Of a stretch of DNA of 64,000 nt, positions 28,270-52,591 are shown in pieces. Positions within the stretch are counted from its first letter, which is position 1. Each line of letters starts with the position of its first letter. Below the pieces are notes generated by a model. It saw nothing but the letters and a program-made list of their open reading frames with translations. It was not told the origin of the DNA and ran no database searches. The translations under genes were made by a program, and so were the position numbers. This DNA is from Vitrella brassicaformis CCMP3155 (Eukaryota > Protista > Chromerida), in contig CDMY01000592.1 in assembly GCA_001179505.1 (NCBI GenBank), positions 248,001-312,000 on the forward strand, given 5' to 3'.

Positions 28270-28570
28270 NNNNNNNNNNNNNNNNNNNNNNNNNNNNNNN
28301 NNNNNNNNNNNNNNNNNNNNNNNNNNNNNNNNNNNNNNNNNNNNNNNNNNNNNNNNNNNNNNNNNNNNNNNNNNNNNNNNNNNNNNNNNNNNNNNNNNNN
28401 NNNNNNNNNNNNNNNNNNNNNNNNNNNNNNNNNNNNNNNNNNNNNNNNNNNNNNNNNNNNNNNNNNNNNNNNNNNNNNNNNNNNNNNNNNNNNNNNNNNN
28501 NNNNNNNNNNNNNNNNNNNNNNNNNNNNNNNNNNNNNNNNNNNNNNNNNNNNNNNNNNNNNNNNNNNNNT
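28270..28570. other. assembly gap (301 N)
   Basis: run of n; ATCTATA(C)n present on both flanks. Confidence 1.
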
Positions 28571-48724: not shown

Positions 48725-49724
48725 GCGTGTGTGTCGACGAATGGACTGTCCCAAAAGAGAGAGTGTGTCCTTGTGTGCGTGACGTTATCAGCCGTTCAAG
48801 ACTGCAAGGCATCTCTTTTTCATTTTATTTTTCACGACTGCATGGTGCGGGTGAGGGTTTAAATTGTGTGTGTGAATCTATAAGTATGGCTCGAGAGGGG
48901 TCATCCGGGGAGACACTACTGCAATCTGTCTATCTGTCTGTCAGTACAAGGGGGGAGGGAGCTCACAGACAGCACGTGCGTGTCCTAGCGTGTCGCTTGT
49001 ACACAGACCCCATCCATGCCGGGATGAAGAGACGAACTGACTATGAGGTAGTGTCCAAAGTGACGAATTTCCGTGAAATGTGTTGGATTCGAAACCTCTG
49101 TTCTACCTGTTCTGCCTCGCGCCGCGCCATGTGTGGGAAGTACTTCCCCCGGTAGGTCTGCCCTGCCAGTGGCAGCTGAAGATCTTTCCTGTTGGCTGTT
49201 GACAGCGACGCGCTCGACGACACCGATGCCCTCCCGGCATCAGCAACAGCTCCACCATGAAGACCTGTCACCGATCTGCTGGACTGCCTGACGCACCACC
49301 ACCAACGCCAATGGCACCACCTTCAACCACCAATGACGGCCGCTTCGCTGTTTCCGACCACCCGCCGCCGCCTGTTGGCGACCAGGGCCCCAGCCCAAGC
49401 GCCTCTGCCTGTGTGCACGATGATGGTGATATGGATGCGGATGAGGAGGTCGGCAGACGGCTCCCTGGCAAGCACCTGGTGATGGATCTTGCGGCCGTGG
49501 TGTGAGGGAAGCGGCGCCAGATGAGGCTCTATCTCCCGGGCGTGGTCAAGATGCGCTTCTGTTGGGCCCTCCTGTGTAGGAGAGACAAGAAAAAGCAAAC
49601 AAGGAGGGAGGGAGGGAGGGAGTGCATCATTGCCAACCAAATGGTTTGTTTGTTGTGTTTAGGTTCCTCTCTTCGAAACTTGCGGCATTTTCCGGCTGTG
49701 ATGCGAGATCCAGGGCACTTGCAC

Positions 49725-52591
49725 ATGCCGACGATGACGCCCCGCTTGGTGCTCCTGCTGGCTGCATGTTTAGTGGCATGCACGTGCGTGTCGGGTCAGA
49801 AGGTGAGCGTGACGGAAGTGTCGGTGGACAGCGCTGTGGAGGACATCAAGTGGGGCGGTGCGGATCACAGCGTGGTGCTTCTCAAGACGATCAAGGGACG
49901 GCTGTACCGCAGCACCGACTCGGGCAAGCAATGGTACGACATTACCAACAGCCTCGTCCTGTCCGAGACAGAGCCTGGTGCGCCAGCCACGGCCATCACC
50001 GTCGACAGCATGCTAATCAACCCCGTCGACAAGAACATTGTGCTCGTCGTCGGCACCAAACACAGCCACTTCATCTCCAACGACGCGGGACGCACCTGGA
50101 GGAGACTCAAGCAGCGGGTGCCGATCCACTCGTGGCAGTTCCACCCCACCCAGCCGCACTGGGCGCTGCTGAGCGCGTGGAGTGACCAGTGCCACACGGC
50201 GAGCGAGCCGGCCAAGACGGCTGCCGGAGGTGCGGTGACGGACAAGGCGTGCAACCACATGCTGTATGTGACCAAGGATCTGGGTGTGTACTTCCACCTC
50301 GTGTCGAGCTACGTGGTTCAGTTCTCGTAGGGCGACGTCAAGCACAACCAGCAGAACTGGATCTACTTCACCCACCACCGCACCAAGGAGGGCGGTCAGC
50401 CCAAGTACGGCGGCTAGACGAAGAACGTCGACTTCGCCGTCACCGAGGACTTCGGCCGCTCCCACCGGGTCCTCATCCACCATACCAACAAGTTCCTCAT
50501 CTCTAATGGGTACACCTTTGTGACCAAGTCGGAGGACGAGGCCAAGCAGACGGTCGCTCTGATGGTCTCAACCGACGGCGGCAAGACCTTCGAGAAGGCC
50601 AAGCTGCCCTTCGAGCTGTCCGAGAAGTCCTACACGGTCCTGGACACATCTGAGGGGGCCGTGATGCTGCACGTCAACCACGGCGACGAGGGCCGCTCGG
50701 GCAGCGGCGACGTGTACATCTCTGACCACAAGGGCCTCAGGTACTCCCTCTCTCTCCCCAGCAACGTCCGCACCACCACAGGCGAGACCGAATTCGACCG
50801 CGTTCTCTCACTCGAGGGCGTGTATCTGGCCAATTTCAAGGACGACCCAGAGGCCGAGGGCGCGCTGTTTACTGCGGCGGTCGAGAAGAAGACCGAGGAC
50901 AAGGCGGCCGAGCATCAGGAGGAGGAGGTCAGCCAGACGGCGGTCTACTAGCGGCACAAACCCAAGCGGCGGTCGAACGCCGAGGATGTCGTCAAAACGG
51001 TCATCTCGTTCGAGAAGGGGGCCGTGTGGTCGTACCTGAGGGCGCCCAAAATCGATTCCATCGGCAAGAGGATCGAGTGCCCCCCCCCACAGATGCTGGC
51101 TGCACCTACATGGTGTGGCGAATTTCCACAACTACGCGCCCTTCTACTCGGTGGAGAACGCCGTGGGCATCATCATGGGCACGGGCAACGTGGGCCCCCA
51201 CCTGCGATACGAGGCCGACGAAGTCAACACCTACCTCTCGCGCGACGGCGGGCTCTCGTGGGTGGAAGCCCACAAGGGCGCCTTCATCTACGAGTTCGGC
51301 GACCACGGGGGGCTGATCGTCATGGCCGACGACCTGCACAAGACCAACCAGGTGGTCTTCTCGTGGAACGAGGGCCAGTCCTGGTACGACTTCGAGCTGG
51401 GCACCTACCCTGTGGAGGTCGACAATGTGGTCATCGAGCCCAACTCGTCGAGCGTCGAGTTCCTCCTCTACGGCACCAGGGGGGACAACGGCGTGGTCTA
51501 CCACCTGGACTTCAACGCGCTGGGGCAGCCTGCGTGTCAGGGGGTATATGCCGCCGACTCTGTGTCCTCCGACTATGAGACCTGGACGCCCTCTGACGGG
51601 CGGTCGACGGAAACGTGCATACTCGGTCAGTGAGTGAATGAGGCAGATAGACAACACACACAACAGAGGGCATGTTCTCTCTCTCTCTCTCTCTGTGCGT
51701 GTGTGCCTGAGTGCAGGTCGTCAGCTGACGTACACGCGCCGCAAGCAGACGTCCGAGTGCTTCAACGGCCGGGATTTCTCCCGCCCCCTGGCGCGCAAGA
51801 ACTGTGTCTGCACCGAGGAGGACTACGAGTGCGAGTTTGGCTTCACGCGCAAGATCGGCTCACTCGAGTGCCAGCCGGAGGACCCCAAGCTCACCGCCCC
51901 TCACTGCACCTCCGGCAACTTCTTCTACATGGACGCCTACCGACGAGTGCCCGGGGACACGTGCGAGGGCGGCTGGGCGCCCCAGAAGGTGGCGGTGCCG
52001 TGCCCACACAACTCGCCCTTCAGCCGCGGGGCATACAGCGTCCTCTTGGTGCTCTTCCTCTTGTGTGTCCTGCTGGGCGGCATCACCTTCCTCTCCAAGA
52101 CCGATCGGCTCAAGGGCCTCCCAGCGATCTCCTTCCTCAGCCAGGCGGGCTTCGACACCTTCGGGGGCGTCAAGTACGCTCGGCTGGGCAAGGGCAGCCA
52201 CCGGGACGACGACCACCACGACATGGGCTTCATCGACAACGAACACGACGCATACGAGGAGGACGCCCCCAGCCTCATGACATACACCACAACCGAGTCG
52301 CGGCATCGGCTCAATGTCAACCACCACGCACACGACGAAGACGAGCACGAGACGACCACACACATGAATGCGAAGCGGGAGGGGGAGGGGCTGGCCGATG
52401 ACGACACCAACCGGCAGCAGCAGCAGGAGTCGTTGATGGATCTGGAGGGCGGGGGCGGGGCGGGGGGTGCGACAGAGGGTGAGAGGCGGGTGGCCAAGAG
52501 GGCGGCGCTCGAGGCGGCCACCGAGGAGGTACCCAAGTTAGCTCCACCAGCCAATAGCAAAGGCGGCGCCACAGGCAGCGAACTCATATGA
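49725..52591 (+). CDS. SORTLR: sortilin/VPS10 receptor (TgSORTLR-like), disrupted as written by 3 TAG codons and a +1 frameshift
   Basis: signal peptide, Asp-box repeats (RSTDSGKQW, STDGGKTF, SRDGGLSW), 10CC cysteines (TYTRRKQTSECFNG..DYECEFGF), TM and acidic tail; one intron 51626-51716. Confidence 0.85.

What the first reader, a model, noticed from the sequence alone, without database searches (positions are those of the whole stretch)
50328..51080. Sortilin interrupted by three in-frame TAGs (two at conserved Trp) and a poly-C +1 frameshift
TAG at 50328 (VVQFS*GD) and 50415 (KYGG*TKNVD) occupy positions that are Trp in apicomplexan sortilins; a third is at 50949. A 9-C run at 51080-51088 has one C too many (should read CPPHRCWLHLHG). 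The signal peptide, 5' 600 nt and 3' 1.5 kb are clean. Sortilin is central to rhoptry/microneme biogenesis in Toxoplasma, so loss would be surprising. Options: (a) UAG-to-UIG A-to-I mRNA editing, as in ascomycete sexual-stage 'pseudogenes'; (b) TpG-to-TpA (RIP-like) decay of a spare copy, supported by an Asp-box D-to-E change in SFEKGAVW and by near absence of introns; (c) a local low-quality assembly patch. Global TAG reassignment is unlikely because several neighbours end in TAG.
Basis: partly seen in the sequence, partly recalled or inferred. Interest (0 to 1): 0.75.

Follow-up and report, generated by a model that had tools for sequence, protein, structure and literature searches.

The report
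Decayed sortilin duplicate, probably misjoined
The three TAG stops and the extra C are ordinary damage in the front half of a spare, decaying copy of the sortilin gene of the alga Vitrella brassicaformis, whose genome also holds an undamaged twin of that half and a third, intron-rich sortilin gene, so nothing needs RNA editing or a changed genetic code.

Summary
There are TAGs at 50328, 50415 and 50949 in one frame, and a run of nine C at 51080-51088 that shifts the frame by +1. They sit in a gene that matches the Sortilin-Vps10 and Sortilin_C profiles in order along its whole length.

The genome is Vitrella brassicaformis CCMP3155. It holds a 94%-identical twin (end of contig C219, continued in the 1082-base contig C191). 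The twin reads TGG, TGG and TCG at the three sites and has seven C then G at the run. A third copy on C752 has at least 15 exons, is 62% identical and keeps both Trp.

The window's 5' half also has eight replacements at strongly conserved positions, including an invariant Gly and the Asp-box Asp, and a drift towards A/T. It is a decaying duplicate. TAG at Trp is what G-to-A decay gives by chance, and I found no RIP-like context and no genome-wide TAG pattern.

All window damage lies upstream of a 148-base stretch (51161-51308) that is identical in both copies, and all the twin's damage lies downstream. This is the only shared stretch longer than the assembler's 75-base word, and the twin's contigs break exactly there. 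The window gene therefore looks like a dead 5' half joined to a live 3' half. That is probably an assembly misjoin, less likely a recent real exchange.

An overlapping window of this scan noted the same stretch (s1-215980).

The parts
49725..52591 (+). Sortilin-type gene as assembled: signal peptide, Vps10 beta-propeller, 10CC module, membrane span, cytosolic tail, TGA stop at 52589-52591
   Evidence: Pfam matches run in order over six pieces. Alignment to Eimeria, Cladocopium and a EukProt sortilin.
49725..50327 (+). Open N-terminal piece (201 codons) with the signal peptide. Homology to the C219 twin starts at 49699.
50328..50330 (+). TAG 1. The twin and the C752 copy have TGG, and Trp is conserved in outgroups (YVVQFSWGD).
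   Evidence: Polarised as G-to-A on the window lineage.
50415..50417 (+). TAG 2. The twin has TGG, and Trp is conserved (GGW[ST]xNVD).
50949..50951 (+). TAG 3. The twin has TCG (Ser). It lies in a variable acidic linker, and the neighbouring codon also changed (TAC against GAC).
51012..51014 (+). GAG (Glu) at the Asp-box Asp. The twin has GAC, and Asp is found in 91% of 66 outgroups.
51080..51088 (+). Run of nine C that shifts the frame by +1. The twin has seven C then G (CPPDRCW).
51109..51110 (+). Site where the C219 twin carries a 72-nt GT..AG intron. The window copy and the C752 copy lack it.
   Evidence: annotators spliced it in P0001; unique in the genome.
51161..51308 (+). 148-nt stretch identical in both copies, the only shared run of 75 nt or more. 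The twin's contigs break at 51234/51235, exactly the last and first unique 75-mers. Proposed junction between the decayed 5' half and the conserved 3' half.
   Evidence: Velvet k=75 is stated in PMC4501334.
51354..51770 (+). Stretch deleted in the twin (C191). Present only here among copies of this type.
51626..51716 (+). 91-nt GT..AG intron at CILG|RQ. The C752 copy has an intron at the same position.
   Evidence: Reading..
51717..52591 (+). Last exon: rest of the 10CC module, membrane span, tail with EDAPxLM and VPxLAPP motifs. It has no replacement at conserved columns.

Best explanation
The window's sortilin gene is not an edited or recoded gene. Its 5' half, from the start codon to about 51160, is a decaying duplicate of a Vitrella sortilin gene. 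Two Trp codons mutated G-to-A to TAG, one Ser codon mutated C-to-A to TAG, and a C run gained a base. These sit among many other changes typical of relaxed constraint.

Shown here: the changes are specific to this copy. A 94%-identical twin and a third intron-rich paralog keep the ancestral codons.

Inferred: the 3' half, from about 51309, belongs to a copy that is still under constraint. The two halves meet in the only stretch where the two copies are identical for longer than the assembler's 75-base word. The assembled gene therefore most likely joins a pseudogene's front to a live gene's back. On that reading the true live gene is the C219 front plus the window's back, and the true pseudogene is the window's front plus C191, with its deletion and transposon.

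Less likely, a very recent real exchange between the two loci made the same hybrid. Either way, at least the C752 gene can supply sortilin function.
For: Copy-specific lesions:
- The twin on C219/C191 has TGG, TGG, TCG and seven C plus G at the four lesions, and is open for 535 codons.
- The C752 copy keeps both Trp and CPPDRCWLHLHG, with no stop in any exon-level match.

Decay of the window 5' half:
- Derived changes polarised with C752 are 28 on the window lineage against 15 on the twin.
- Changes towards A/T are 38 against 14.
- At columns conserved in 66 outgroups the window has eight replacements, among them Gly (100%) to Thr, Ala (97%) to Thr, Asn (91%) to Asp, Lys (91%) to Asn and the Asp-box Asp (91%) to Glu. 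The twin has two.

Switch at the junction:
- Downstream, changes towards A/T are 4 against 11 (Fisher p=0.002).
- Downstream, conserved-column replacements are 0 against 3 (p=0.035).
- All four window lesions lie upstream. All three twin lesions lie downstream: a 417-bp deletion that breaks the frame, a 6-bp insertion, and a break into an integrase (rve) fragment. The joint chance is 0.008.

Assembly context:
- 51161-51308 is the only identical run of 75 nt or more; the next longest is 68.
- C219 ends and C191 starts exactly at the last and first unique 75-mers.
- The genome was assembled with Velvet at k=75 (PMC4501334).

Other support:
- No second copy of 51354-51770 exists in the assembly.
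- No database protein corresponds to the window copy.
Against: - dN/dS between the two copies is only 0.20 over the 5' 1.6 kb. On polarised sites the window lineage shows about 13 nonsynonymous against 15 synonymous changes, so the neutral phase was short or the polarisation is biased.
- Three stops are slightly more than expected if only the window's excess changes were neutral: P(3 or more) is about 0.02-0.06 for 20-30 substitutions and 0.19 for 50.
- The pipeline used paired reads and broke suspect joins with REAPR and mate pairs. That argues against a surviving misjoin inside a scaffold of more than 300 kb. I cannot explain mechanically how the window 5' and 3' halves were joined if they are not adjacent.
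- The C219 front carries one derived Ala-to-Ser at a 98%-conserved column, right beside the junction.
- No reads or RNA data could be examined.
- I did not build a joined model of the C752 gene, so its integrity is judged exon by exon only.
Confidence: 0.72

Rival explanations
1. The assembly is right and the hybrid is real. A very recent reciprocal exchange in the 148-nt identical stretch swapped the back halves of a live sortilin gene and its pseudogene. Both loci are now broken in this strain, and only the C752 gene works.
For: The same switch of lesions, A/T drift and conserved-site replacements at 51161-51308. The region 51110-51353 is more alike (6 differences in 244 nt) than the rest, which hints at past recombination between the loci. 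REAPR and mate-pair checks in the pipeline make a surviving misjoin less likely.
Against: It needs a rare rearrangement to be fixed, and the loss of a gene type that was kept under constraint since an old duplication (62% identity to C752). The junction falls exactly where a k=75 graph is ambiguous, and the twin's contigs stop at the unique 75-mers, which an assembly cause predicts without further assumption.
Confidence: 0.12
2. There is no hybrid. Both copies are correctly assembled, independent pseudogenes. The window copy happens to be hit only in front and the twin only behind.
For: It is the simplest reading of the assembly as deposited. Clustering of the four window lesions within 760 of 2775 nt is not significant on its own (about 0.065, my own calculation).
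Against: The joint chance of the lesion partition is 0.008. Independent tests show the same switch: A/T drift p=0.002 and conserved-site replacements p=0.035. A dead gene should decay along its whole length, yet the twin's front stays open for 535 codons and the window's back for 461.
Confidence: 0.08
3. Base-level sequencing or polishing errors. The real locus reads TGG, TGG, TCG with a shorter C run, and is an intact gene.
For: Homopolymer length is a classic error class. The gene sits next to a repeat-affected part of the assembly.
Against: The data are Illumina reads corrected with SGA and three rounds of ICORN. Mis-mapped paralog reads could only introduce the twin's bases, which are the intact ones. 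The 5' half carries dozens of other copy-specific changes, including eight at conserved residues. The C-run change is a substitution plus an insertion.
Confidence: 0.04
4. The gene is functional and is rescued at the RNA or translation level. UAG-to-UIG A-to-I editing, or readthrough, restores Trp, and slippage on the C run restores the frame.
For: Two of the three TAGs sit at invariant Trp. The frame is otherwise open, and pairwise dN/dS is 0.20.
Against: TAG at Trp is expected by chance from G-to-A decay. The third TAG was Ser. Editing cannot mend the +1 shift. The 5' half has lost an invariant Gly and the Asp-box Asp. Intact relatives exist. Stops inside kinase exon matches across the genome are mostly TGA, with no TAG-only pattern. 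As far as I know, this kind of editing is described only in filamentous ascomycetes (my own knowledge, not checked here).
Confidence: 0.02
5. A RIP-like, duplication-triggered C-to-T hypermutation inactivated the spare copy.
For: There is an excess of G/C-to-A/T transitions on the window lineage: 14 of 28 polarised changes. Both Trp stops are TpG-to-TpA.
Against: Only 7 of 32 such transitions are in a CpA/TpG context. Ten are in CpG and fifteen elsewhere. Nine of the 28 polarised changes are G/C transversions. The twin's front is not affected.
Confidence: 0.02

Closest known systems
Duplicated-gene pseudogene (non-processed or partly intron-less duplicate that decays by nonsense and frameshift mutations)
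   Same: A young paralog pair at 94% nt identity. One member shows copy-specific stops, a homopolymer frameshift, drift towards A/T and replacements at conserved residues, while relatives stay intact.
   Different: Only the 5' half shows decay. The 3' half looks constrained, which an ordinary pseudogene should not.
Repeat-induced chimeric contig at a de Bruijn-graph junction (short-read assembly artefact)
   Same: The switch lies in the only run of identity longer than k=75. The twin's contigs end at the last and first unique 75-mers.
   Different: Not proven. The pipeline included paired-read scaffolding and REAPR, which should catch such joins, and no reads were available here.
Apicomplexan sortilin (TgSORTLR of Toxoplasma and the Plasmodium and Eimeria sortilins)
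   Same: Same architecture: one Vps10 propeller, 10CC, a membrane span and a tail with conserved motifs. Identity is 55-57% to Eimeria stiedai sortilin.
   Different: Vitrella has two diverged gene types (this one and C752, 62% identical), plus the extra young duplicate. Chromera also has two (P0140 and P0142, 69% identical). No function was tested.
Sexual-stage A-to-I mRNA editing of premature UAG codons in filamentous ascomycetes
   Same: TAG in DNA at positions that are Trp in homologs.
   Different: A different lineage. The third TAG is at an ancestral Ser. A frameshift remains that editing cannot mend. Other conserved residues are lost. No RNA evidence.

Membership tests
Sortilin / Vps10-domain receptor family | Vps10 ten-bladed propeller domain (Pfam PF15902) over its full length | tested here: met
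   Pieces match profile positions 2-119, 149-290, 291-323 and 330-445 in order, with E from 1e-14 to 1e-36.
Sortilin / Vps10-domain receptor family | 10CC module (PF15901), followed by one membrane span and a cytosolic sorting tail | tested here: met
   PF15901 positions 2-60 and 63-167. A hydrophobic span and the tail motifs EDAPxLM and VPxLAPP align with Eimeria and dinoflagellate sortilins.
Sortilin / Vps10-domain receptor family | Uninterrupted reading frame (a functional member) | tested here: not met
   Three in-frame TAGs and a +1 shift. An invariant Gly and the Asp-box Asp are replaced.
Duplicated-gene pseudogene | Disabling mutations specific to this copy, with intact paralogs in the same genome | tested here: met
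   The twin has TGG, TGG, TCG and seven C plus G. The C752 exons are open.
Duplicated-gene pseudogene | Relaxed constraint along the whole copy | tested here: not met
   Met for 49725-51160 only. Downstream of 51309 the window copy has no conserved-site replacement and the lower A/T drift.
Duplicated-gene pseudogene | No functional transcript or protein | not testable with these tools
   No RNA data could be reached. No database protein corresponds to this copy.
A-to-I (UAG to UGG) restorative mRNA editing | A in DNA and G in RNA at the stop | not testable with these tools
   No reads or transcripts of Vitrella could be retrieved.
A-to-I (UAG to UGG) restorative mRNA editing | Editing of the TAGs alone restores a complete, conserved protein | tested here: not met
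   The +1 shift at 51080-51088 remains. The third TAG was Ser. Eight conserved residues are replaced.
Reassigned TAG codon (variant genetic code) | In-frame TAG at sense positions in many genes, and TAG not used as a stop | tested here: not met
   Both paralogs use TGG at these sites. Stops inside kinase-domain exon matches are mostly TGA with some TAG and TAA, as expected for read-through of introns.
RIP-type repeat-induced point mutation | C-to-T transitions almost only, with a CpA context preference, on both repeat copies | tested here: not met
   7 of 32 transitions are in a CpA/TpG context and 10 in CpG. There are many transversions. The twin's front is spared.

The most novel reading that the evidence does not exclude
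The window copy is expressed and rescued at the RNA level in a chromerid alga. UAG-to-UGG editing would restore the two Trp codons, and polymerase or ribosome slippage on the C run would restore the frame. That would extend restorative stop-codon editing beyond fungi.
Probability: 0.02. Interest if true: 0.85.

Novelty: new member of a known kind. Interest (0 to 1): 0.12.

Why it matters
The finding matters mainly as a caution.

- Sortilin is not lost in Vitrella, and there is no case here for stop-codon editing or recoding in chromerids.
- The locus is a concrete candidate misjoin in the reference assembly: the scaffold holding this window, at window 51161-51308. If confirmed, the true gene is the front on C219 joined to this window's back. 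The deposited proteome would then lack a full-length model of one of the alga's two sortilin types.
- The paralog set may interest people who study intron turnover. One copy has at least 15 exons and another has one or two introns. A 72-nt intron is present in only one of two 94%-identical copies.

Tried and rejected
Searches that gave nothing useful:
- Three protein word searches looked for an annotated or transcript-derived Vitrella protein of this gene. The queries were the C219 open frame, the window's last exon, and a profile with a full-length first row so that proteins of 508-1615 aa were eligible. Only the partial C219 model P0001 appeared. There was no transcript-derived sequence, so editing and the linkage of the halves could not be tested.
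- A literature search for Vitrella plus sortilin gave nothing specific.
- The PDB sequence search with the first piece was too weak to align the Trp sites. The alignment replaced it.

Ideas tested and rejected:
- The TAGs lie in introns. Rejected, because the twin is colinear and open there and the Pfam matches run in order.
- The 72-nt intron of the twin is an introner-like mobile element. Rejected, because it is unique in the genome.
- A second copy of the stretch deleted in C191 exists elsewhere. None was found.
- The flanks of the two loci share sequence, or the C191 transposon lies near the window gene. No match.
- RIP context.
- A genome-wide TAG-only pattern.

Checks that did not work or were not done:
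- A GC3 comparison of the 3' segments was made in the wrong frame for the window segment, so that one number should be ignored.

How the pieces were handled:
- Inside my own scripts the window pieces were concatenated for codon alignment. Stops were shown as X or left out of the counts, and one C of the run was skipped.

Full report
**What is there**

The window is part of a scaffold of Vitrella brassicaformis CCMP3155. The genome has 72.7 Mb in 1064 pieces. The closest database protein is an NCBI Vitrella entry that lies on the twin's contig.

On the + strand a sortilin-type gene starts at ATG 49725 and ends at TGA 52589-52591. It has one 91-nt GT..AG intron at 51626-51716.

In its frame there are TAG codons at 50328, 50415 and 50949. 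A run of nine C at 51080-51088 shifts the frame by +1.

The pieces between the breaks match Pfam Sortilin-Vps10 and Sortilin_C one after another, with nothing missing. The breaks therefore lie inside the coding sequence.

**Relatives in the same genome**

A search of the genome with the Vps10 profile found two more loci.

The first is a twin at the very end of contig C219, and it continues without gap or overlap in the 1082-base contig C191.
- It is 94% identical in DNA over window 49699-51109, and 97-98% identical over 51110-51355.
- It reads TGG, TGG and TCG at the three TAG sites. It has seven C plus G at the run, giving CPPDRCW. It is open for 535 codons.
- It carries a 72-nt GT..AG intron at window position 51109/51110 that the window copy lacks. 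The NCBI model P0001 splices this intron out, and the intron is unique in the genome.
- Downstream the twin is damaged. It lacks window 51354-51770, which breaks the frame, and it has a 6-bp insertion. After window 52090 it diverges into sequence with an integrase-core fragment (rve, E=9e-6).

The second locus, on C752, is a 62%-identical copy with at least 15 exons.
- It keeps both Trp and the CPPDRCWLHLHG motif.
- It shows no stop in any exon-level match from the signal-peptide region to the tail.
- It shares the intron position at CILG|RQ with the window copy.
- I compared it exon by exon only. I did not build a joined model.

**Is TAG at Trp special?**

No. I took the twin's 459 codons as a stand-in for the ancestor. 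They hold 38 G/C-to-A/T transition sites that create a stop. Of these, 22 are in Trp codons and 26 give TAG. The third TAG arose from Ser by a transversion, in a variable linker.

Fourteen of the 28 polarised changes on the window lineage are G/C-to-A/T transitions. Their contexts show no CpA/TpG preference, so RIP is not indicated.

Across the genome, stops inside kinase-domain exon matches are mostly TGA, with some TAG and TAA. There is no sign of TAG used as a sense codon.

**The 5' half is decaying**

I polarised the differences with the C752 copy. Upstream of 51110, 28 changes fall on the window lineage and 15 on the twin. The window has A/T where the twin has G/C 38 times, against 14 the other way.

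Against 66 outgroup sortilins, the window copy has replaced eight residues at columns where one residue holds 70% or more. Five of the eight are:
- Gly (100%) to Thr
- Ala (97%) to Thr
- Asn (91%) to Asp
- Lys (91%) to Asn
- the Asp-box Asp (91%) to Glu

The twin has two such changes.

The pairwise dN/dS of 0.20 (dS 0.13) shows that both copies were constrained for most of the time since the duplication. The decay is therefore fairly recent. Three stops are somewhat more than the small number of other changes would predict, but not significantly so.

**The unexpected part: the gene looks like two halves with different histories**

Downstream of 51309 the picture reverses.
- A/T drift is 4 (window) against 11 (twin). 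Fisher p=0.002 against the upstream ratio.
- Conserved-column replacements are 0 against 3, p=0.035.
- All four window lesions lie upstream and all three twin lesions lie downstream. The joint chance is 0.008.

The switch falls in 51161-51308. This 148-nt stretch is identical in both copies and is the only shared run of 75 nt or more; the next longest is 68.

The genome paper states that Vitrella was assembled with Velvet at k=75. Scaffolding with SSPACE, gap filling with GapFiller and IMAGE, polishing with ICORN and breaks by REAPR followed (PMC4501334).

C219 ends at 51160+74 and C191 starts at 51309-74. These are exactly the last and first 75-mers that contain a twin-specific base. This is the signature of a de Bruijn-graph junction in which the shared node was used for one path only.

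The simplest reading has two true genes. The live gene would be the C219 front plus the window's back: a complete frame with two introns. The dead gene would be the window's front plus C191. On this reading the scaffold joins the wrong pair.

I cannot show this. Paired reads and REAPR should have opposed such a join, and I see no simple way for the tools to make it. A recent real exchange in the same stretch would give the same sequence picture.

Gene conversion cannot explain the picture. It would leave donor and recipient nearly identical, which they are not.

**Comparison with what is known**

The protein type is the single-propeller sortilin of apicomplexans and dinoflagellates, 55-57% identical to Eimeria stiedai sortilin. 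Chromera velia has two such proteins, 69% identical to each other. Vitrella also has two diverged types, plus this young extra copy.

The fungal UAG-editing model fails on three counts tested here:
- the frameshift remains;
- the third TAG was Ser;
- conserved residues are lost.

Its defining test, A in DNA and G in RNA, could not be run.

**Verdict**

This is an ordinary decaying duplicate, at least in its 5' half, with intact relatives in the genome. It is probably combined with a repeat-induced misjoin in the reference assembly. Interest is low, apart from the assembly correction and a minor note on intron turnover.

An overlapping window of this scan noted the same stretch (s1-215980). Another note reports a TAG-broken frame elsewhere in this genome (s1-246606), and I did not examine that locus.

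Noticed in passing
L010:9804-9875 (C219), equivalent to window 51109/51110: A 72-nt GT..AG intron is present in one of two 94%-identical paralogs. It is absent from the other and from the C752 copy, and it is unique in the genome. This is a recent intron gain, or a precise loss that happened twice.
   Followed up: partly
L011 (C752:12000-21999), minus strand, about L011 8722 to 3895: A third sortilin gene with at least 15 exons, against one or two introns in the window/C219 type. The intron at CILG|RQ is shared. This implies large-scale intron loss in one paralog lineage.
   Followed up: partly
L005:119-120 (C191), equivalent to window 51353-51771: The 417-bp deletion in the twin starts 2 nt after the position where the C752 copy has a 66-nt intron (KYTKQ|VVFSW). 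This may be coincidence or a trace of how the deletion arose.
   Followed up: no
L005:861-1010 (C191): An integrase-core (rve) fragment follows directly after the truncated sortilin copy. It marks a retrotransposon at the end of the small contig.
   Followed up: partly
window 51110-51353: The two copies differ at only 6 of 244 positions here, against 6-9% elsewhere, with fewer synonymous differences than expected. This may be a past gene-conversion tract.
   Followed up: no
I did not locate or examine it. My kinase tally shows no genome-wide TAG-only pattern.
   Followed up: no
window 49597-49622 and 28270-28569: A (GGGA)n microsatellite lies about 100 nt upstream of the gene's start. A 300-N scaffold gap lies at 28270-28569, and there is no gap near the gene.
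   Followed up: no
P0140 and P0142 (Chromera velia): Chromera has two VPS10-domain proteins that are 69% identical to each other. Each is about equally distant from both Vitrella types, which suggests separate duplications in the two chromerids.
   Followed up: partly
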